Shown: one piece after another, positions 52,045-61,295 of the stretch | Numbering within the stretch: the first letter of the stretch is position 1 | How the letters are laid out: each line of letters begins with the position of its first letter | Assembly (NCBI GenBank): GCA_001949185.1 | Contig: BDGG01000002.1 | Location: 2,973,826 to 3,037,825, forward strand | Length of the DNA: 64,000 nucleotides | Direction of reading: 5' to 3' | From: Ramazzottius varieornatus | Lineage: Eukaryota; Animalia; Tardigrada | The notes under the pieces: generated by a model | What the model was told of the DNA's origin: nothing | What the model saw: the letters and a program-made list of their open reading frames with translations, nothing else | The model's database searches: none | Position numbers and translations under genes: made by a program

Positions 52045-53791
52045 CTGTACTCTCGCGATACACATGGACATACTCAAGGCTGTACTGGTGAAAAGTAACC
52101 GCAAGTAAAAAAGTACCGTTTGAATGACGCACTTGATTGCTTGAAACGGTATCTTGACTTAGGCATGTTCAACCACCTGTTAGGGACTATTTTCGACTTC
52201 GAAAAGCTGGGTTCTTGAGAAGTTTTGCCTCTGTGCTACTGTACGTAATATTACACCATGGGAAGATTTAGGACTCGAGCTGTGTACAGAGTATCGGAGG
52301 CTCAGAGAAATCTGCGAGCTCAGGCGGAAAGTGGAATATCGCTGCGAGCTTATGCAAAAGCGGTGAAGATACCGTGTTCAACGATATCTCTGTGGAGGTA
52401 GGACAAAGCTTGAAGCTGTTTGCGTCTTTAACCGTTCATGTTCTAAATATATATCGTTTCAGAAAAAAGTTACCTGAAGGCACTTTTAAAGGACGACTTA
52501 AGCCGATGTACGAGCCAATAGAGAAAAGGGTCTATAACGAAGTGATCAAAAGTAGAAATATTGGACTTCCAGTGCGCGATAGCGACGTTCGATCTTGGGC
52601 ATTACAGTTCGCCAAGGCATTGAATATCCACGGAATTAAAGCGTCTTGTGGTTGGATATCCAAGCTAAAGAAGAAGTATCATTTGATTTATCGAGCAATA
52701 ACTAAGGTCAGACGAAAAACCACGAAGACTCCCGCAGACGAAGTAAGCCAAACACAAACTCCCTCGCTGGTTTTACCGTTTCCTGTAAATCTGTTGAGGC
52801 TTATTCTGTCTTTTGTTTGCTCGAATAGCTTGCCGAACATGTTTTCATGGAGCGAGTGAAAGAAATCGTCACTCTGGAGAAAACCCATCCAAGCCGTATA
52901 ATCACCTTTGACCAGACTAGTCTCCTCTTGCAAAACACGTACGGAAAGACTTTATCACCTGTTGGAGTCAAACAAGTCCACGTCGTTCAGCCACCCGGTG
53001 AGAAGGAACGATTTACGGTAGGCCTCGCTGTGACGGGAGACGGACAGAAATTTCCAGCTGCGATAGTTTTCAAAGGTGGAGTGAAGACTGGTGAGCTCTC
53101 GCGTAACATTCTAGCGAAGTTAGTGATTCCCGACAACGTCAACGTCTTTTCTACCCGAACTGCTTGGTGAAACTCTAAAATCGACCAAGACTGGATCGAG
53201 CAGTCTTTCGAACAGGACCAACCTGAACCGTTATTTCTACTTCGGGATAATTTCCCGGGTCACTTGAAGTTCGAAAGCGCAGAATTGTTGGACGAGAGAA
53301 ATGTCGATCAGGTTTTCGTACCGAAAGCGATGACGGGTACCTACCAACCGCTCGATGTTGGCATAAACGCACCCTTCAAAGCCAACCTTAAACGAGCGTA
53401 TCATGAGTGGCGGAAAGAGCGTACGGAAGTCACGGCCAAAGGTTACCTGCGGAAGCCGACTCGGCAAGACTTTTTCAACTTTGTTAGCAAAGCTTGGGAA
53501 GCAATCAGACCGGAAAAGATTGAGAATGCGTTCGTAGGAGCTCAAATTCCTCCTGAACCGACGTATATGCTTTCGAACAAGGAAGTTTTGGTTGAAAACG
53601 ACAAACAGCTTCTGCAGTTTAGCTTTAGTTCGGTTGAAGAAGACAGTGATGCTGAAGTAGCGGAAGATTCCTCTTTGAAGTACAGCTTTTCGAATGATTA
53701 TTGATTGAGTAAAACCGAAAAAGTTTGCCCCCGCCAGGTGTAGTTTCCCAGCGTACAAGGGTATATGTCCATATGTATGGCGAGAGTACAG
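52045..53791 (+). mobile_element. full-length pogo-superfamily DNA transposon (DD35D), 28-bp TIRs, TA TSD
   Basis: TA|ctgtactctcgcgatacacatggacata ... tatgtccatatgtatggcgagagtacag|TA (26/28 match); encloses a transposase. Confidence 0.93.
52258..53704 (+). pseudogene. pogo transposase (HTH + CENP-B HTH + DDE_1), two introns, one premature stop
   Basis: KASCGWISKLKKKY; FDQTS; ERFTV; LLRDNFPGH; QPLDVGINAPFK; 35 residues between the second and third Asp; TGA at 53168-53170 in an otherwise open frame. Confidence 0.9.
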
Positions 53792-54898
53792 TAATGTGGC
53801 AATGAAAACGTGCGCCGCTCATGGTTCAGCGACTGAACCTTTCGTTCGCCATTGGCCATCCTCGCGAATGATTATGATGGGTTGTCTTTTCGTTCGGTCT
53901 TGACAATATCTTGACAATATCATTTCTCTTACAGGTAAGCTGAATTACACAGAAGCCGCCTTGTACGACGTACAGCGTCTGGCAACGGTGACACCTCTCG
54001 GTATACCCCACACCAACTTTGCGCCGATGAAGGTCGATGGGCACGACATCCCCGCTCGAACACTGCTACAAGCTAACATACACCCCAACCCGAAAAACTG
54101 GGCTCATCCGGATGAGTGGCATCCCGAGCATTTCCTGAACGACCAGAATGAACTGTTTGTGCCTAAAGCCTTCATGCCATTCAGCGTCGGTAAGCGCGCC
54201 TGTCTCGGAGAATCCTTGGGGAAGATGGAACTTTTCCTTTACTTCACAAACATCATCCAGCAGTTCGAAGTTCAAGCTGATCTCAGAGAACTCAAACGAG
54301 CCGAGAATCAGGCCATCGGGATCTTCAACACTCCGCTGCCTTTCAACATCCGCCTGGTTCCATGACGACCCTGAAGAATTTGTCATTGCATGAATACTGT
54401 ACCATAAATGCATTTTACCGGTATATCCTACCGTTTCTAACTTAGTTATGATTTGTTCTGCTGCACTGAATGGAGTCTTGGTAGCCATTTAGTTTTTGTC
54501 GACGACAGTGGCGCCTCACAAAGTACCCATCACGAGCAGCGAATAGTCCCGTGCGTCTGTTCTTACGTTTCTAATAACCTTATTTTGGAACAGTCGTTCC
54601 TAACTTGAGCCTATAATTGCTTTTTCTTTTGATGAAGTTCGCCATTTGCTGGAAGACGTACAAGGACGAGAATCGTTCTGTAAAGCGAAACACCGTTACT
54701 CGAAAGAAGAAAATTACAACATATTATCATACACAGAGATTTGTTTGATCGCAATTACAGATTATCATGTTCAGCTTGGGATACTAAAACTTCTCAATCA
54801 CAACGCGAAACAAAGACGTTACTCAACTGCGAAAGATCCATTGAAAGCAGCCAGAAATATGGCCCATATGCACTTCTGAACTAAAGCGATCGCACTCT

Positions 54899-57854
54899 CT
54901 ACTGAAAGTTGAATAATGGCCCAGCGCCAACTTGCACCGGGCTCTCCGCTGAGGAGATAGACATTATCGGTCCGTACTGCGCAGCACCGTAAGGACCACC
55001 GTTGTTTTGCACTTGAAAGAACGTTTGAATGTTTCCTGCGAACGTAGGGGACGTCGGATAGGAGAGCGTGGCTGGTGCAGGTGAGAAAACTCGCTTCGAA
55101 CAAAGAACGTCTTTCAGCATCTCGTGGGCTGGCTGCTCTCCACTTTGGATCTTTTCTTTACCTGGAAGATAAGTAAGATGCTGTATCCGAACAGTAAAAC
55201 TGGGAAGATAATGTTGCGATCGGCTCGGGTGTGAAGAAAGCCGCAAGAAAATTTCGTCCTTTTGCTACCACTAGTCTCGTCAAGTTATTACGGTAACGAA
55301 CGGTATGGCAATGGCGATTGTGCTACAACAATGAGTACGCGTACGATGGGAAATTATGGAACAGGCGGAAAAGACGGCAACACAGAAATTCGACCGTAGA
55401 AAAGTATAGAAAAGTGTATTACTGTGAATCGGTCGCGTACGTACGTTCTTCCGTACCCCGTAGCGAAAAGGCCTGGTCCCATAATTTCCAGTCGTGCGTA
55501 AACTCGTACAAATGACTGAAAAAATACATACAGCGAGTGGCAACCATTCTGAGGTCGATGAGGTTCAACAGCAGGTCGGAGAAGTTCGCCGTCTGGGTGG
55601 GCTGCAGTCGCGCCACCAGTAGCTTGAGAGCATCCAGCAGAGGCTCCTGAATCATCTCGATCGTATTCTCGTCCTCAATTTCCGGACAGTCTACAGATCA
55701 AAACCCAAGAATTAGTGGATCGGAATTAGGGATGGGCGCAGTATGATTTCGAAGGCAAACATACCTGCTCGAAAGAAGCACAAGGCACTCAGAACGGCTT
55801 GGCACGCCGCGTCCAGGCGCATTTGCGCGAGAATCTTGGCGAAGCGGAAGATGTCCTCTTGGATATCTTCCAGACCGAGCTCGATGCAGCGCAGTCTTGT
55901 CAGGTACACCCCACCAGAAAGGACGAATCGATCCGAGTGAGAGTCGTACAGGTTGCAGATTCGAAGAAGCTGAAACATCAAACAGTTGCTCGCAACACTC
56001 CCCCTTACTCCACCGCGGGGGAAATCGATATAAAAATCTTAGACAGTTAGACTCACCATTATCTCAAGGCAGCTGTTCTTCAAGAGAACTTGCTGGTCCG
56101 AAGTCGTCAAAGAAGAATAGCCGGGTAGTTTCCTGACATACTCTACGGCTTGCGTCAAAGCCGGATGTGAAAGCTCGTTAAGATCCATGAACGGAGCCGC
56201 CTTCTTCATATTCTCCTCCTCGTCCAGACGAACATTCGGTGAAATCTACCAAAAACAACCGCAACTACAGTACTATTTTCCTCTTACAAACTTAATACTG
56301 GCGCTCAGTCTGGGGTGATAGTATTTGCATTTTACCGTGGCGGTGCAGTTGTGGGCAGAGGCAATCCGATCCACAAGGTGCGAAAGACTCTGGGGAAGGC
56401 CGGTGAGAATGCTGGAGATGGGATAATCGTTCTTGCCTTTGTTCTTCCTCTCTCTCGTTTTACGAACCGCTGAAAATATTTGCAGTAAGTATTAGCACTT
56501 TTTGCAGTTACCATTTCGCTTACGATTTCCGATTATTTGGGACGACGGCAATTCGAAGTCACCCAGAACGTCGTCTAAAGCGACGCGCGTTTTCACGGTT
56601 ATTGACCGAATGCGTGCGCGACTTGGGAAAATGATCTGTGGAATTCATTGTCGACGTCCCCTTTTTCTGAGTTTCGTTTCTTACCTTCTCGGGACATGCC
56701 GGCTGCCAAACACCGTTGGAATCGGCAGTACTGACAACGGGTTCTCTTCTGCATGGTGATGTCGCAGTTACCATTCTTGTGGCACTTGTATGTCGGGTTC
56801 TTTTGGATGGTTCGGCGAAAGAAACCCTGCATTAATGAATCAACAAAGACGAGATTATTGTCACTTGCTTGCTTTGATGAGAGACAAACAAGGTGATTTC
56901 CAGGTAGAGATCTCATCGAAGAAAGCTCTCTTCCTTGTTCTGGCAAGGAACAAGCGGCTTCTTGGAAGCCAACTTCACAAAAATCAAAGATGGGAATCAA
57001 TCAACTCAGCAATCTAGTAACTGTGAGTCTGTGACGGCACAGCCCTGTGAGGCAACAGTGCTATGCGGACACGGCCTTGAGTAATAAGTCAAGGCTATGC
57101 CAATGACGTCAACAAGGGATCAGTCATACAAATGGCCAGTTTGAACTGTTGATTGATCACATTCGAAGCATTTCTGTTGAGCCTCTAGGTCTGTTTTGGT
57201 TCTGATTTCTAACCTTGCATCCCTCGCAGCTGATTGTCTTGTAGTGAAGTCCTGAAGACTTGTCGTTGCAGATGACACATCTTCCTTCAGGATAGGTCCG
57301 TTTCCGCTTCGCAGAGGTGGTCGGACTGCTGAGCGTGGAATCTCCCGACTGGGTGGTACTGCTGGGGAGGCTTTCCAGCGTCGACGGCGATCGGGATGAG
57401 GATTCTCGCGACGACGTGTGGTAGCCTATGGATCCGGAAAGTGTTGGTTCTGAGCCGAAAGAGTCCTGGTCAGGACTGGATGGCATACGCGAGAAATTCG
57501 GCGAGAAGGTAGACGTACAGTTGACAGCTGATTGCGACGGAAATGAATCTGTACACGTACTCGTGATGAAAACAGATATATTTCAATGAGACCATAGTAG
57601 GCTCACAGCCTACGCCATTATTCTCCGTCGACAGGTTCTACTCCTACCGTGAGAAAATATGGTTCGTCTGGTGGGAACTTACAGTTGCTCGTGGCGCCCA
57701 AGGGTTTCTGAACCGGAAACGCCTGATGGTAATATTTTAGGGTGGATTGGTGAGCAGTGGAAAAGGCGGCCATGTTCCCGTTTTGAATTCCGGAATAAGT
57801 AGAGAGATATTGTACAGTTTGTAGAGGATAGAAGGAGCCTAATGAGCTGTCCAT
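54899..57854 (-). CDS. nuclear receptor of subfamily 1, most similar by eye to retinoic acid receptor (NR1B); 8 exons
   Basis: DBD CVICNDKSSGLHYKTISCEGCK|GFFRRTIQKNPTYKCHKNGNCDITMQKRTRCQYCRFQRCLAAGMSRE|AVR; LBD YVRKLPGYSSLTTSDQQVLLKNSCLEIM|LLRICNLY...IQEPLLDALK...IDLRMV; all exons join in frame. Confidence 0.9.
55333..55505 (+). mobile_element. MITE family C copy (GAG...CTC termini) in the last nuclear-receptor intron
   Basis: gagtacgcgtacgatgggaaattatgg ... ccataatttccagtcgtgcgtaaactc. Confidence 0.78.
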
Positions 57855-58999
57855 TTTTCAACAAATATAAATCTAACCTCATACGCACGAAAAACTGTCT
57901 CGAATTCAACTTTCACTCACAGTTCAAAATCTGGAACCTCGGCTATCACCCCGCAAAATCAAAGACCTGAGAATGATAGTTCACCTTAGTTAAAACTGGA
58001 GTTCTTGGAGGAGATCCAAGTTGCATTGTGTGTGTATAACTTTAAACTCCACCCCTCTGCTTCTGTTTCCAGCCAAAGAGCTCCGCCCCGGTCTTTTTGG
58101 CGATGGTGATGACTGGAGAAACGACACGTCCTTGTGAAATCAAGAGTGAACCCAATCAACCGCTGCAGCCTCGTGATACATCTGAGGGTGAGAGGGTGAG
58201 GTCCCGACTCCTCGGACCTTCAGCCGGGGCACAGGCTGGCTTCTTCGCCTGTGGTGGTCTGGCATGTCGGATGAGACAGGTTGTTGTTCAGCGAACATTC
58301 TGGGTATGGGTGGACATTGTCTGCCCAGCGTCCTTCTGGCCAGCTGACCTTAATTAGCGGCTTATCTGCTCATGACAAGTCAGGCTGTATTGTTCTCAAG
58401 CTGGAAATTCAGGTGTTCCTCTCCCTGGCTGAGCCTTTTCCTTGGGAGACAGCCTTGAAAAGGTGTTTGTGTGTCCTACTTTGCCCTTTGGCTTGGCAAG
58501 CCAGCTACAATGCCTTTTCAAATTTCACCAGCTCCATCGGCCATCGAGCATCTTTTCTAACTTTGACCAAAGGCTTTGCTTTAACACGTGCAACACCTTC
58601 GGGTCGTGTGGCACAAATTTCTGAAATATCCATACTTGAATCCAAAGTATCGAAAAATCCCATACAGGAAGGAGTCATGCATGAAACGCGGCGATGTCGA
58701 CAATAAGACTTGATTTCCACACAGTGGTCTCCAGCAGAAATGTTTTTCGACACACGCTCTTTTACTGTAATCGTAAAGATATGCAGCAAGTTTAGCGCAT
58801 AATACTAAACCATTAGGTCTGATAACAACCAGATACTACATTTTATTGTTCCCGTGGTTTGACTGATAACCGCGTAAAGGGAGTAGGATAGGGCGTTGAT
58901 AACCAAGTTCCTTCAAGCGTCGTGCTTCCGGTTGAGGACACTTCCGTATGCAGGTAGGTTTATGATTCAAATGTCGTAGTTTATCGCATTTCTGCCAAC

Positions 59000-61295
59000 A
59001 TGGAACTCAGGAATATATACTGTGTTATTTTGTGGGTTATCGCTACGTTCGAAGCAACAAGATCAGAAAGTATACTTACCGTGGCGGTTTATTTCCTAAC
59101 ATTTTTGTGCATTACATCTTGTCTTAATACATGTTTCCGTGATTGTAGGTCCTGACTATTGGGACCAGGTGGCTCGTAACGAGCTTCGACGAGCCCTGAA
59201 TGTTCGAAAGATCGAGAAACGACCGAAGAATGTCGTCTTCTTCCTGGGGGACGGCATGGGCATCACCACGTTGACCGCTTCCCGAATCTACAAAGGACAG
59301 CTAAACGGGAGACGGGGAGAGGAAGGAACTTTGTCCTTCGAGAATTTTCCTCACGTCGGACTGTCAAAGGTATGCTCCAAGCCAACCGCAGAGCGCTGGA
59401 AATTTATCAGTTAGTTATGTAACTTTCTATACAGACGTACAATGATGATGCCCAAGTGCCAGACTCGGCCGGAACTGCCACCGCATTCTTTTGTGGGAAG
59501 AAGGCCGCACTCGGAGTGATCGGACTGAACAGTAACGCCAAGTTGGACGTGTGTTCCACTGCCGCGGGTAACGAAATGTCCTCCATTCTGGAATGGGCTC
59601 AGGAAGCCGGCAAAGCTACTGGTTTGGTGACCACCACCAGGATCACCCATGCCACACCTGCCGGCACTTACGCTCACACACCCAACCGCGACTGGGAGTA
59701 TGATGGCGAGATCCCTGCAGCTGACCGAGGAAGGTGCAAAGATATCGCGACCCAACTGATCGACAGCGACCCGGGCAGACACATCAGAGTAAAAAGAACG
59801 CTTATACCGATAACAGCATCGCATATCAATACAAAAAAATACGAAGCTGACGAACTTGCACAATCGTTGCTTCAAGTGGCGCACGATTTCATTGTTGTTG
59901 GCTAGAATGGTGCGCCACTTGATATGACGAGCTTGTTCGTTTTATTCGATCAGCTTCCACAATGAAACTATACCTATGATTGTTTCAGGTTATCTTCGGT
60001 GGTGGTCGACGAATGTTTCTGCCCACCAGCGCTGGAGGAAGTCGTGGCGATGGCTTAAACTTGATCGACCGCTGGTTGAGGGAGAAGAGCCAGCTGCGAC
60101 CGGGCAAAACATTCTACGTGCGCAACTTCACCGAAATGGACCAACTGGATGCCGCCAACACGGACTACGTCCTCGGCCTTTTCAACAGCGATCACATGAA
60201 GTACGAGTTGGAACGCGAGAAAACCGTTAATCAAAGCGATCGAGAACCCTCGCTGAAGGAGATGGTCGAAAAGGCCATTGATATACTTGTTGCTCGAAAC
60301 ACTGGGTTCTTCTTGGCGGTCGAAGGTGGCAAGATCGACCACGGACACCACGCTGGACAGGCCAAGAAGGCCATGCACGACGTAGTGGCGTTTGATCAAG
60401 CCATTGAGATGGCGGTGAATAAGTTGGGAACGGAGGATACCCTGTTTGTGGTGACGGCGGACCATTCGCACACACTATCCATGGGCGGATACGCTAAACG
60501 AGGTACGGTATGAAAAACTGCAAGAGCGCAAACCCAGTTGCGCGAATTGATGGAAAAAACATAAGTTGTATCGCAAGGTGATTTTAGGAGGTAGTATCTT
60601 GGGCTTCGGAGGGACAGCCAACACCCTCAACACGGAACCATCTCACATCCATCCCGACGAGCGAGTCCCCTACTTGACGCTGGCCTACGCCAACGGTCCC
60701 GGAGGCGGCATGTGGTTCAAGAGGAACTACAGCGACCCTGGCAGCATTCAACCAGGACCAGGTACCATAAGTTTCCTTCACGTATCTCTTGGCGCGCGTG
60801 ACCCATTCAAACAAAAATAGTTTGTCTCCGTGCTTGGCAGAGGACGACAACTTCATACAAGATGCGGGAATCAAACTGGGTATCGAGTCGCACGGTGGTG
60901 AAGATGTAGCCATCTACGCTAACGGACCCTTCGCTCACCTGTTCCACACCCTCCACGAGCAGAACTACATCCCGGTGGCCATCGACTATGCGGCGTGCTA
61001 CCGCAATCAAGATGCGCCACATTGCAGAGAGGCCGAGACGACCGGTCCTACCAGCAAACCCGAGGTAGGCTCAACCTCTGTTATGTCCTCCAGCCCAACT
61101 GAACCGCGTACAACCACACCGACGTTGTTTGATCCAGCGTCGTCGTCAACGTTGAGTTCGAACACCGCTAGTCCTGCGGCTTACTCATCCTCACCCCAGG
61201 TGACTACACCGAGTACCGGTAGCTCGAATACATTTTCCTTTCTTCTAATTTCCACTATTGCTTTCGCCGTACTTATTCGCGGTAGACCTTTCTAA
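59000..61295 (+). CDS. alkaline phosphatase, predicted GPI-anchored; about 6 exons
   Basis: Signal peptide; NVVFFLGDGMG; PDSAGTATA (catalytic Ser); THATPA; EGGKIDHGHH; TADHSH; HGGEDV; Ser/Thr stalk and hydrophobic tail. Confidence 0.95.
59840..59945. repeat. palindromic repeat family B (ALP1 intron)
   Basis: tcaagtggcgcac...gtgcgccacttga. Confidence 0.75.

What the first reader, a model, noticed from the sequence alone, without database searches (positions are those of the whole stretch)
54899..57854. Intact, divergent RAR-like (NR1B) nuclear receptor in an apparent ecdysozoan genome
Seen: 8 exons join in frame. RAR-type features occur in every region: DKSSG.HY, FFRR.IQKN..Y.CH...NC and RCQYCR.Q.C...GMS.E.VR in the DBD; helix 1 LVDRIASAHNCT (RAR LIEKVRKAHQET); LLRICNLY (RAR ILRICTRY); IQEPLLDALKLLV (RAR LQEPLLEALKVYV); IDLRMV. 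Established: RAR is absent from insects and nematodes and, as far as I recall, reported among ecdysozoans only in priapulids. Inference: if this is a tardigrade, RAR survived into Panarthropoda. The pocket and AF-2 (MLKDVL, Asp for the usual Glu) are divergent, so it may no longer bind retinoic acid. A few positions (RTIQKN, CLEIM, DLRM) are TR-like.
Basis: partly seen in the sequence, partly recalled or inferred. Interest (0 to 1): 0.85.

Follow-up and report, generated by a model that had tools for sequence, protein, structure and literature searches.

The report
Expressed RAR-like receptor in a tardigrade
The tardigrade Ramazzottius varieornatus has an intact, expressed nuclear receptor gene whose closest relatives are retinoic acid receptors, a family reviews describe as lost from moulting animals other than priapulid worms, although it lacks the two charged residues that normally hold retinoic acid.

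Summary
Eight minus-strand exons (54899-57854, all GT..AG) encode a 532-aa nuclear receptor identical to NCBI's unnamed RvY_04452 of Ramazzottius varieornatus. Spliced contigs from four studies reproduce all seven introns.

The RAR reading is mostly supported:
- Database hits are RARs at 247-189 bits; the next family, E78, scores 162 and TR 143.
- The Hypsibius orthologue is already auto-named "Retinoic acid receptor beta".
- Five genuine RARs each pick this gene as their best match among the modelled tardigrade receptor loci.
- TR, E75, E78, HR3, EcR, HR96, HR38 and USP each have their own locus.

Phylogenetic support is only moderate. The tardigrade clade joins RARs at bootstrap 88 / SH-aLRT 76 with 57 taxa, and in 39% of replicates with 41 taxa. 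AU tests do not reject a TR-side placement (p 0.06-0.08).

Both basic retinoate anchors are gone (RARγ Lys236→Pro, Arg278→Leu), so canonical retinoic acid binding is unlikely. It probably works like the mollusc RARs, as a retinoid-independent partner of USP/RXR.

I also found a second, DBD-degenerate paralogue on contig 7 and a separate TR-like gene. No searchable paper reports a tardigrade RAR. I put RAR orthology at about 0.68 and class this as a new member of a known kind.

The parts
57855..57939 (-). 5' UTR (about 85 nt)
   Evidence: Spliced contigs reach 57926-57939 upstream of the ATG at 57854.
57683..57854 (-). Exon 1: start codon and N-terminal A/B domain (residues 1-57 plus one base)
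   Evidence: In-frame model. The donor at 57683|57682 is confirmed by the joint 57548/57683 in four runs. No Pfam match; modelled as disordered.
57214..57548 (-). Exon 2: Ser/Thr/Pro-rich A/B domain and zinc finger I (Cys148-Lys169 at 57279-57214, ending CEGCK)
   Evidence: Pfam zf-C4 profile positions 2-24, E 3.1e-07. Joints confirmed.
56685..56826 (-). Exon 3 (142 nt): the rest of the P-box helix (GFFRR), zinc finger II with D-box HKNGN, to GMSRE
   Evidence: Pfam zf-C4 profile positions 25-70, E 4.7e-17. All eight zinc-binding Cys are invariant in the alignment with RARs. Joints confirmed.
56336..56469 (-). Exon 4: T/A-box extension (AVRKTRERKNKGK), hinge and LBD helix 1 (LVDRIASAHNCT)
   Evidence: Model. 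Helix 243-259 at pLDDT above 90. Joints confirmed in three of four runs; the fourth has a contig break there.
56057..56245 (-). Exon 5: LBD helix 3 to the start of helix 5, with the NR signature YVRKLPGY...DQQVLLK. Includes Pro289 (RARγ Lys236) and Arg299 (RARγ Lys246)
   Evidence: Pfam Hormone_recep, E 3.1e-06. PDB: TRα 31.7 bits against RARα 30.9, a tie. Residue mapping.
55765..55969 (-). Exon 6 (205 nt): LBD helix 5, the β-turn and helices 7-8. LLRICNLY holds Leu331 (RARγ Arg278); Ser342 corresponds to RARγ Ser289
   Evidence: PDB: RARs lead (27.9-22.6 bits), then EcR 22.0 and TR 17.2. Residue mapping.
55532..55690 (-). Exon 7 (159 nt): LBD helices 9-11, with IQEPLLDALKLLV and IDLRMV
   Evidence: PDB: RARs 32.6-28.4 bits, Rev-erb 27.7, FXR about 24, and no TR among the 60 rows shown.
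54899..55161 (-). Exon 8: end of helix 11, a short H11-H12 loop, the AF-2 core MLKDVL (residues 460-465 at 55120-55103), a 67-residue F domain and the stop codon
   Evidence: The intron 7 junction is confirmed in four runs, so the short H11-H12 segment is real. AF-2 alignment with TLKELF and ILMEIL in the other tardigrade copies. H12 is predicted helical but at low pLDDT.
54616..54898 (-). 3' UTR (about 283 nt)
   Evidence: Spliced contigs end at 54616-54693.

Best explanation

Shown: it is transcribed and correctly spliced. It encodes a complete nuclear receptor with a zinc-finger DBD (EGCKG P-box, all eight Cys) and a confidently folding 12-helix LBD.

Inferred from family: it binds AGGTCA-type direct repeats as a heterodimer with USP/RXR, which the genome encodes.

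Inferred from residues: it has lost both basic residues that clamp the retinoate carboxylate (RARγ Lys236→Pro289, Arg278→Leu331), and several aromatic pocket residues are replaced by Leu. It therefore most likely does not bind retinoic acid in the canonical way. It probably acts like the mollusc RARs, as a retinoid-independent (constitutive or repressive) partner of USP/RXR, or as a low-affinity sensor of some other lipid. The AF-2 core is kept as MLKDVL, with Asp for the charge-clamp Glu and Arg for the helix-3 Lys.
For: Gene reality: model and splicing; identical to GAU92361.1.

Similarity: in the full-length search RARs of molluscs, tunicate, echinoderm, lamprey and fish score 247-189 bits, then E78 162, NR4A 152 and TR 143. 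For the Hypsibius orthologue, all 118 non-tardigrade hits listed are named RAR or carry no informative name. On the PDB panel RARγ scores 228, RARβ 218 and RXR 164; RAR LBD-only chains score 104-121 bits; no TR LBD is among the 60 rows shown. The Hypsibius copy gives the same ranking. Exons 6 and 7 alone hit RARs first.

Reciprocal best hit: five genuine RARs each score this gene highest among 22 R. varieornatus NR loci (203-234 bits against 157-189 for the runner-up). E78, Rev-erb and NR4A pick other loci, and TR picks none clearly.

Tree: the tardigrade trio (100/100) joins the RAR clade (100/97) at 88/76. RAR is the most frequent sister in both bootstrap sets, at 87.7% and 39.3%.

Discrete characters: 3-4 of 13 RAR-diagnostic columns are shared, against 0-2 of 14-21 for E78, PPAR, NR4A and EcR. 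The TR-specific two-residue DBD insertion is absent, while a separate TR-like gene (C17_530k) has it.

Structure: LBD pLDDT 80-97. RAR entries lead the Foldseek hits and no TR is in the top 50 rows.

Pocket table. USP/RXR present. Mollusc RAR precedent: PMC7827873.
Against: The joining node is not robust. It falls to 39% of bootstraps when non-NR1 receptors and the longest branches are removed. AU tests fail to reject trio+TR (p 0.059), trio+TR+C17_530k (p 0.081) or trio+mollusc RARs (p 0.064).

The trio sits outside all sampled RARs instead of with the protostome RARs. LBD identity to RARs is only 26-34%, against 26% to TR and 23-33% to the EcR group. Only about a third of RAR-diagnostic columns are kept.

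Sampling was limited. I had one TR sequence, no Priapulus or annelid RAR, and no non-tardigrade NR1F, NR1H, NR1I or NR1J. Ligand binding, DNA binding and dimerisation were not tested.
Confidence: 0.68

Rival explanations
1. It belongs to a tardigrade-specific (or otherwise unsampled) NR1 lineage that is not orthologous to RAR. It could be an old NR1 branch or a strongly derived duplicate whose RAR-like motifs are retained ancestral NR1A/B characters. It would work as an orphan class II receptor.
For: With 41 taxa, NR1 collapses into four unresolved lineages, one of which is the tardigrade trio. Trio+RAR appears in only 39% of bootstraps. AU tests cannot separate the alternatives. The trio never nests inside the RARs (0.5-0.7% of bootstraps). 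LBD identity to RARs is 26-34%, barely above other NR1 groups. The gene has duplicated and one copy has a degenerating DBD, which indicates fast evolution.
Against: RARs outscore every other family by 85 bits or more in database searches with both species' proteins. The reciprocal best hits are clean. Every other NR1 group found has its own tardigrade locus, which leaves RAR as the only vacant ancestral slot. No arthropod or nematode protein scored closer than the RARs in a 5.8-billion-protein database.
Confidence: 0.22
2. It is a thyroid hormone receptor (NR1A) orthologue or a TR-derived duplicate.
For: Exon 5 scores TRα marginally above RARα (31.7 against 30.9 bits). RTIQKN, CLEIM and DLRM are TR-like. 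AU tests do not reject trio+TR (p 0.059, 0.081).
Against: The genome has a separate TR-like gene (C17_530k) with ATGYHYR, CC.E.M.LRAA.RYD and the TR-type two-residue DBD insertion. Its LBD exon hits TRs first and it pairs with Xenopus TR in the trees (88/82 and 93/80). This gene lacks the insertion. The only TR-containing hit (an engineered Xenopus construct) scores 143 bits against 189-247 for RARs. No TR LBD is among the 60 rows shown, or the top 50. Trio+TR occurs in 0.1-0.2% of bootstraps.
Confidence: 0.06
3. It is a contaminant or a horizontally acquired gene from a lineage where RAR is already known.
For: None found.
Against: It lies inside a 9.03-Mb contig of the assembly. It has short GT..AG introns and a host-wide dispersed repeat in intron 7. 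It has a paralogue in the same genome with the same LBD intron phases and an orthologue in Hypsibius exemplaris. It is expressed in runs of four studies, all carrying the same coded organism label. Its closest non-tardigrade relatives are only about 40% identical.
Confidence: 0.01

Closest known systems
Mollusc RARs (e.g. Reishia/Thais clavigera, Acanthochitona crinita, Nucella lapillus)
   Same: They are the best database hits (41-42% identity over DBD plus LBD, 227-247 bits). The domain layout and P-box are the same. Pocket residues are substituted, including the Arg278 position in Reishia (Cys) and Lys236 (Ala). They are reported not to bind retinoic acid and to act as constitutive repressors with RXR (PMC7827873), which is the mode I propose here.
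   Different: All three tardigrade proteins have lost both basic anchors and also replace Phe230, Phe288 and Phe304 with Leu or Ile and Gly393 with Cys. The H11-H12 segment is about seven residues shorter. The AF-2 Glu is Asp in this copy. The branch is much longer.
Priapulus caudatus RAR (Fonseca et al. 2019, PMC6947571)
   Same: It is the only RAR so far published from an ecdysozoan. It also has a divergent pocket, with 14 of 25 contacts changed, including Lys236→Arg and Ser289→Ala.
   Different: The priapulid receptor keeps Arg278 and is activated by retinoids at high dose. The tardigrade proteins have Leu, Asn or His there. I had no priapulid sequence in hand, so no direct comparison was made.
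Vertebrate RARα/β/γ (e.g. PDB 6fx0, 5uan, 2lbd)
   Same: They are the top solved-structure matches by sequence (228 and 218 bits) and by fold. The DBD is 59-68% identical to RARs overall. Shared motifs are DKSSG.HY, the CH D-box, LRIC..Y and QEPLL.ALK.
   Different: LBD identity to RARs is 26-34%. The carboxylate clamp is absent. Charge clamp Lys246 is Arg and Glu414 is Asp. The A/B and F domains are long, disordered and unrelated.
Thyroid hormone receptor (NR1A)
   Same: It is a closely related NR1 group. It shares FFRRTIQKN, C.EIM and DLRM, and ties on exon 5.
   Different: TR has a two-residue DBD insertion and the CC.E.M.LRAA.RYD motif, which this gene lacks and the separate tardigrade TR-like gene C17_530k has.

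Membership tests
Nuclear receptor superfamily | C4 double zinc-finger DBD followed by a helical-sandwich LBD | tested here: met
   Pfam zf-C4 (E 4.7e-17) and Hormone_recep (E 3.1e-06). All eight Cys are invariant. The AF2 LBD model has pLDDT 80-97 with the canonical helices.
RAR (NR1B) | Reciprocal best similarity to bona fide RARs | tested here: met
   Forward: RARs 247-189 bits against 162 for the next family; the same holds for the Hypsibius orthologue; PDB ranking. Reverse: five RARs each pick this gene first among 22 R. varieornatus NR loci.
RAR (NR1B) | Well-supported monophyly with RARs in a phylogeny of NR1 groups | tested here: inconclusive
   UFBoot 88 / SH-aLRT 76 with 57 taxa. 39% of bootstraps with 41 taxa. 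AU tests do not reject trio+TR (p 0.059, 0.081) or trio+mollusc RARs (p 0.064). The sampling lacked Priapulus and annelid RARs and had only one TR.
RAR (NR1B) | RAR-type DBD: EGCKG P-box, DKSSG.HY, four residues between QKN and the next Cys, CH at the D-box, GMS.E.VR T-box | tested here: met
   Read directly from the alignment. His185 is one of the RAR-diagnostic columns. Several of these states are probably ancestral for NR1, so they exclude TR more than they prove RAR.
RAR (NR1B) | The four residues that hydrogen-bond the retinoate carboxylate in human RARγ (Leu233, Lys236, Arg278, Ser289; listed in PMC6947571) | tested here: not met
   Leu286 and Ser342 are kept. Lys236→Pro289 and Arg278→Leu331; Hypsibius has Tyr/Asn and the C7 paralogue Pro/His. 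Some accepted RARs (Reishia, Styela) also lack Arg278. This bears on ligand binding, not on orthology.
RAR (NR1B) | Binding of, and transactivation by, retinoic acid | not testable with these tools
   Needs ligand-binding and reporter assays. The pocket residues predict loss.
RAR (NR1B) | Heterodimerisation with RXR/USP on direct repeats | not tested
   USP/RXR genes exist (C6_1188k: 100 bits to USP and RXR; its paralogue C6_1269k). The USP LBD is spliced and has no reference.
RAR (NR1B) | AF-2 core ΦΦxEΦΦ in helix 12 with a helix-3 Lys charge clamp | tested here: inconclusive
   MLKDVL has Asp for Glu, and Lys246→Arg299. Hypsibius has ILMEIL but Gln at the Lys position. H12 is modelled as a helix at low confidence.
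TR (NR1A) | Two-residue insertion after QKN in the DBD, the CC.E.M.LRAA.RYD motif in H4-5, and best similarity to TRs | tested here: not met
   The insertion and motif are absent here but present in C17_530k. TR scores 143 bits against RAR 247. Trio+TR occurs in 0.1-0.2% of bootstraps. The AU test alone does not reject it.
E75 / E78 / HR3 / EcR / HR96 | Clade membership or best reciprocal hit with that group | tested here: not met
   Each has another locus: E78 C6_123k (363-379 bits), E75 C2_6814k, HR38 C2_5366k; EcR C8_561k and EcR-like C3_434k, HR96 C3_4376k, HR3 C2_4020k. The last four were named from hallmark motifs recalled from memory. Starred branches (98/95 and 99/98) exclude the trio from the TR+EcR and E75/E78/PPAR/HR3 clades.

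The most novel reading that the evidence does not exclude
Tardigrades kept both ancestral NR1A and NR1B receptors: a TR-like gene, and an RAR that is duplicated in Ramazzottius. The panarthropod ancestor would then still have had RAR and TR. Their absence from arthropods and from nematodes would reflect separate later losses, not one early ecdysozoan loss after the priapulid split. In tardigrades the RAR would have been freed from retinoic acid (carboxylate clamp lost in all three copies; no carotenoid oxygenase detected) and would now serve as a retinoid-independent USP/RXR partner.
Probability: 0.55. Interest if true: 0.65.

Novelty: new member of a known kind. Interest (0 to 1): 0.55.

Why it matters
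Current reviews say RAR was lost very early in ecdysozoan evolution, after the priapulid split, and that TR was lost in ecdysozoans (PMC7827873; PMC6947571). An expressed RAR-type gene in two eutardigrade genera, together with a TR-like gene, would move those losses to later, independent events in the arthropod and nematode lines.

It would also give a third natural case, after molluscs and priapulids, for asking how RAR ligand dependence evolved. Here both carboxylate anchors are missing. Hypsibius exemplaris is a tractable laboratory species, so the question can be tested directly by ligand binding, reporter assays, RNAi and expression mapping.

Two things temper this. The gene models are already public, and one is already auto-named RAR beta. 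The orthology also rests on similarity more than on a robust tree.

Tried and rejected
1. A word-index search restricted to the LBD (residues 236-470) returned only the query, because the LBD shares too few 5-mers with anything. That search was wasted.

2. The ESM Atlas did not discriminate. Feature hits were TRα, NR0B and generic LBD clusters at 0.96. Structure hits RARα, TRβ and HR3 all had TM 0.84-0.86.

3. False lead: a genuine RAR's best single genomic hit was C3:437477-438040, not this gene. That locus is an EcR-like gene whose LBD is one long exon. When the exons are chained, this gene wins.

4. The convergent neighbour P450 (53961-54362, plus strand) was checked as a possible CYP26. 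It belongs to the CYP2 clan.

5. The extra RNA contig in intron 7 was checked as a nested RNA gene. Rfam found nothing, and it is a dispersed repeat of about 115 bp.

6. A longer alternative exon 7 that would have lengthened H11 was considered from the reading frame. The spliced contigs rejected it.

7. I recall that vertebrate RAR genes have exons of 142, 205 and 159 nt, the same lengths as exons 3, 6 and 7 here. A literature search did not confirm this, so it remains an untested lead.

No synteny comparison with Hypsibius was possible, and the source organisms of fragments P0003 and P0004 were not looked up.

9. Complex prediction was not run. The USP/RXR LBD is spliced and has no reference, and no RXR protein id was in hand.

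10. Full-length searches used the identical database protein P0001, which the exon-6 search had returned.
Full report
**1. The observation**

The gene lies on the minus strand. Anchoring the exon ends gives eight exons:

- 57854-57683
- 57548-57214
- 56826-56685
- 56469-56336
- 56245-56057
- 55969-55765
- 55690-55532
- 55161-54899

They are joined by seven GT..AG introns into a 1599-nt frame of 532 codons with one terminal stop. Pfam finds the two halves of zf-C4 on exons 2 and 3 and the start of Hormone_recep on exon 5.

Logan contigs of four runs from four different studies were laid on 54500-58300. They skip exactly these seven introns with no mismatches and define a transcript of about 1.96 kb from about 57939 to about 54616. 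This also shows that the short H11-H12 segment is real and not a splice-model error.

**2. Whose genome, and is the gene already on record?**

The assembly has 55.84 Mb in 200 contigs, and the window is contig 2, 2973826-3037825. Earlier notes of this scan call the genome a tardigrade's.

The exon-6 search of 1.84 billion representatives returned a 532-aa protein, P0001. A script showed it to be identical to my model. It is GAU92361.1, "hypothetical protein RvY_04452 [Ramazzottius varieornatus]". All full-length searches used that id.

**3. What it resembles**

- Exon by exon against the PDB, exon 6 hits RARs first (27.9-22.6 bits; EcR 22.0; TR 17.2). Exon 7 hits RARs first (32.6 bits; Rev-erb 27.7; no TR listed). 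Exon 5 ties TRα (31.7) with RARα (30.9). The DBD exon does not discriminate.
- Full length against 5.8 billion proteins, the best hit after self is OQV26011.1 of Hypsibius exemplaris (47% identity), auto-named "Retinoic acid receptor beta". Then come RARs of four molluscs, a fish, a tunicate, a sea cucumber and lamprey (247-189 bits). After those come E78 (162), NR4A (152) and an engineered Xenopus TR construct (143).
- With the Hypsibius protein as query, all 118 non-tardigrade hits listed are either named RAR or carry no informative name.
- Against solved structures, RARγ scores 228 bits, RARβ 218 and RXRα 164. RAR LBD-only chains score 104-121, and no TR LBD is among the 60 rows shown. The Hypsibius protein gives the same ranking.
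- An AlphaFold2 model built on an RAR alignment folds the LBD at pLDDT 80-97. In the Foldseek results RARβ-RXR ranks first and RAR LBDs dominate the LBD-only hits; LXR, EcR, PPAR and Nurr1 are interspersed, and no TR is in the top 50 rows.

**4. The reciprocal test and the tardigrade's own receptor set**

The genome has 74 zf-C4 and 28 LBD exon matches. A genuine RAR (Saccoglossus) at first seemed to prefer another locus, C3:437477-438040. That locus is an EcR-like gene whose LBD is a single long exon, ending FSLKLENRKLPPLLEEIW. The exon-by-exon scoring had simply penalised my multi-exon gene.

I therefore fetched 20 further NR loci plus the paralogue locus and chained HMM hits into DBD+LBD pseudo-proteins. 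I then scored named references against the whole set:

- Five RARs (hemichordate, echinoderm, two molluscs, fish) all rank RvY_04452 first, at 203-234 bits against 157-189 for the runner-up.
- E78 picks C6_123k (363-379 bits).
- Rev-erb picks C2_6814k.
- NR4A picks C2_5366k.
- TR has no clear favourite (138-147 bits).

By hallmark DBD motifs, recalled from my own knowledge of the families, the other loci include:

- canonical EcR (C8_561k)
- HR96 (C3_4376k)
- HR3 (C2_4020k)
- USP/RXR (C6_1188k and C6_1269k)
- ERR, COUP-TF, FTZ-F1, HNF4 and NR2E members

USP was confirmed by search, at 100 bits to USP and RXR.

C17_530k is TR-like. It has ATGYHYR, the TR-type two-residue insertion (QKGLESQYSC), and LMKTCCLEMMVLRAALRYD. 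Its LBD exon hits TRα and TRβ first, at 34-37 bits.

**5. Phylogeny, and its limits**

I had used all three word-index searches. The reference set was therefore 15 RARs, one TR, E78, Rev-erb, PPAR and NR4A sequences, and the tardigrade loci. It had no Priapulus or annelid RAR and no foreign NR1F, NR1H, NR1I or NR1J.

| Analysis | Result |
|---|---|
| Quick tree, 51 rows | Trio is sister to all RARs, SH-aLRT 86 |
| Careful tree, 57 rows x 323 columns (LG+C20+F+G4, PMSF) | Trio 100/100; RARs 100/97; trio+RAR 88/76; TR pairs with C17_530k at 88/82 |
| Bootstraps, 57 rows | Trio+RAR 87.7%; every other specific sister 1% or less |
| Careful tree, 41 rows (NR1 plus NR4A outgroup, longest branches removed) | Deep NR1 nodes collapse. 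Trio+RAR stays the most frequent arrangement at 39%. Deeper placements take the rest (23%, 17%, 16%). Trio+TR group is 0.2% |
| AU, trio+TR | ΔlnL 13.6, p 0.059, not rejected |
| AU, trio+TR+C17_530k | ΔlnL 9.2, p 0.081, not rejected |
| AU, trio+mollusc RARs | ΔlnL 10.3, p 0.064, not rejected |

Starred branches do exclude the trio from the TR+EcR clade (98/95) and from the E75/E78/PPAR/HR3 clade (99/98).

The trio shares 3-4 of 13 RAR-diagnostic columns (His185, Cys388, Pro409 and one more). It shares 0-2 of 14-21 for E78, PPAR, NR4A and the EcR group.

Identity is modest. The DBD is 59-68% identical to RARs, against 59% to TR. The LBD is 26-34% identical to RARs, against 26% to TR and 23-33% to the EcR group.

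My reading is that RAR orthology is the best explanation, at about 0.68. It rests on similarity ranking, reciprocal best hits, occupancy of the other slots and discrete characters more than on a robust tree.

**6. How it probably works**

Shown:
- The gene is expressed.
- It has an intact DBD with an EGCKG P-box and eight Cys.
- It has an intact, well-folding LBD.

Inferred from family:
- It recognises AGGTCA direct repeats with USP/RXR.

Inferred from residues:
- Numbering follows the human RARγ chain 6fx0 and the RAR alignment.
- PMC6947571 lists four residues as hydrogen-bonding the retinoate carboxylate. Leu233 and Ser289 are kept.
- Lys236 is Pro289 and Arg278 is Leu331. Hypsibius has Tyr and Asn at these positions, and the paralogue has Pro and His.
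- In all three copies Phe230, Phe288 and Phe304 are Leu or Ile, Gly393 is Cys, and Ala397 is Ile or absent.
- The charge clamp is Arg299/Asp463 here, in place of Lys/Glu.
- The AF-2 core MLKDVL aligns with TLKELF in the paralogue and ILMEIL in Hypsibius.

With no basic anchor in any copy, canonical retinoic acid binding is unlikely. The closest functional analogue is the mollusc RAR, reported as non-binding and repressive with RXR.

A six-frame scan found no RPE65/carotenoid-oxygenase gene in the assembly. That fits, but it is weak negative evidence.

**7. Surroundings**

- Downstream and convergent is a P450 exon (53961-54362, plus strand) of the CYP2 clan, not CYP26.
- Further downstream is a Tc5-type transposase HTH (52374-52856).
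- Upstream is an alkaline phosphatase gene (59980-61292, plus strand).
- Intron 7 holds a dispersed repeat of about 115 bp. That explains an extra RNA contig there.

**8. A second copy**

P0002, "RvY_12582", is annotated as a 171-aa LBD fragment. It belongs to a full NR gene at G000:C7, about 2063220-2068549 on the plus strand.

- It has its own zinc-finger exons and the same LBD intron phases as this gene.
- It is 57% identical in the DBD and 51% in the LBD.
- Its P-box reads EGCKS, and five residues are missing from the loop of zinc finger II.
- The two Ramazzottius copies are sisters, with Hypsibius outside (100/99).

**9. Novelty**

Reviews state that RAR was lost in ecdysozoans after the priapulid split and that TR was lost in ecdysozoans. 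Seven of my nine literature searches looked for any report of a tardigrade or other non-priapulid ecdysozoan RAR or TR, and found none. That includes a 2026 survey of tardigrade C4 zinc-finger genes.

The gene models are public, however, and the Hypsibius one already bears an automatic RAR name. I class the find as a new member of a known kind.

**10. Not done**

- Complex prediction was not run, because the spliced USP LBD has no reference.
- The joined model was never typed into a search tool.

Noticed in passing
G000:C7:2063220-2068549 (+) = L005:3223-8549: A second RAR-like gene in the same genome. RvY_12582 is annotated as only a 171-aa LBD fragment but has upstream zinc-finger exons. Its P-box reads EGCKS and five residues are missing from the loop of zinc finger II. 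It has the same LBD intron phases as the window gene, and it is 57% identical in the DBD and 51% in the LBD. It is sister to the window gene, with Hypsibius outside.
   Followed up: partly
G000:C17:530454-532100 (+) = L022:1454-3082: A TR-like (NR1A) gene. Its DBD has ATGYHYR and the TR-type two-residue insertion (QKGLESQYSC). Its LBD has LMKTCCLEMMVLRAALRYD and hits TRα and TRβ first in the PDB. It pairs with Xenopus TR in the trees on a long branch. A review states that TR was lost in ecdysozoans.
   Followed up: partly
G000:C6:1186596-1189261 (-) and G000:C6:1267785-1269748 (-): Two USP/RXR loci about 80 kb apart on one contig. They are sisters in the tree (100/99). The first scores 100 bits to USP and RXR DBDs.
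   Followed up: partly
G000:C8:559522-561582 (-) and G000:C3:434114-438040 (+): There is a canonical EcR (DBD ...CDIDMYMRRKCQECRLRKC) and a second, divergent EcR-like gene with an altered P-box (CTGCKS). Its whole LBD is a single exon ending FSLKLENRKLPPLLEEIW.
   Followed up: partly
window 55385-55500 (intron 7 of the gene): One copy of a dispersed repeat of about 115 bp. Forty copies were scored at 85-92% identity out of 413 first-look candidates across the genome. It accounts for an extra, partly matching RNA contig of depth 20-33 in the read lay-out. It has no Rfam match.
   Followed up: yes
window 53961-54362 (+): The C-terminal exon of a cytochrome P450, convergent with the receptor gene. 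It belongs to the CYP2 clan (best PDB hits CYP2D6, 2B and 2R1), not CYP26.
   Followed up: yes
window 52374-52856 (+) and 59980-61292 (+): An ORF with a Tc5-transposase HTH domain lies downstream of the gene. Exons of an alkaline phosphatase gene lie upstream.
   Followed up: no
whole assembly G000: The six-frame scan found no match to the RPE65/carotenoid-oxygenase family (PF03055), so no obvious enzyme to make retinal from carotenoids. This is an exon-by-exon scan, and the negative is weak.
   Followed up: no
P0003 (88 aa, JGI metagenome) and P0004 (78 aa, Logan assembly): Two short database fragments are 57% and 48% identical to exon 6. P0003 closely resembles the Hypsibius protein.
   Followed up: no
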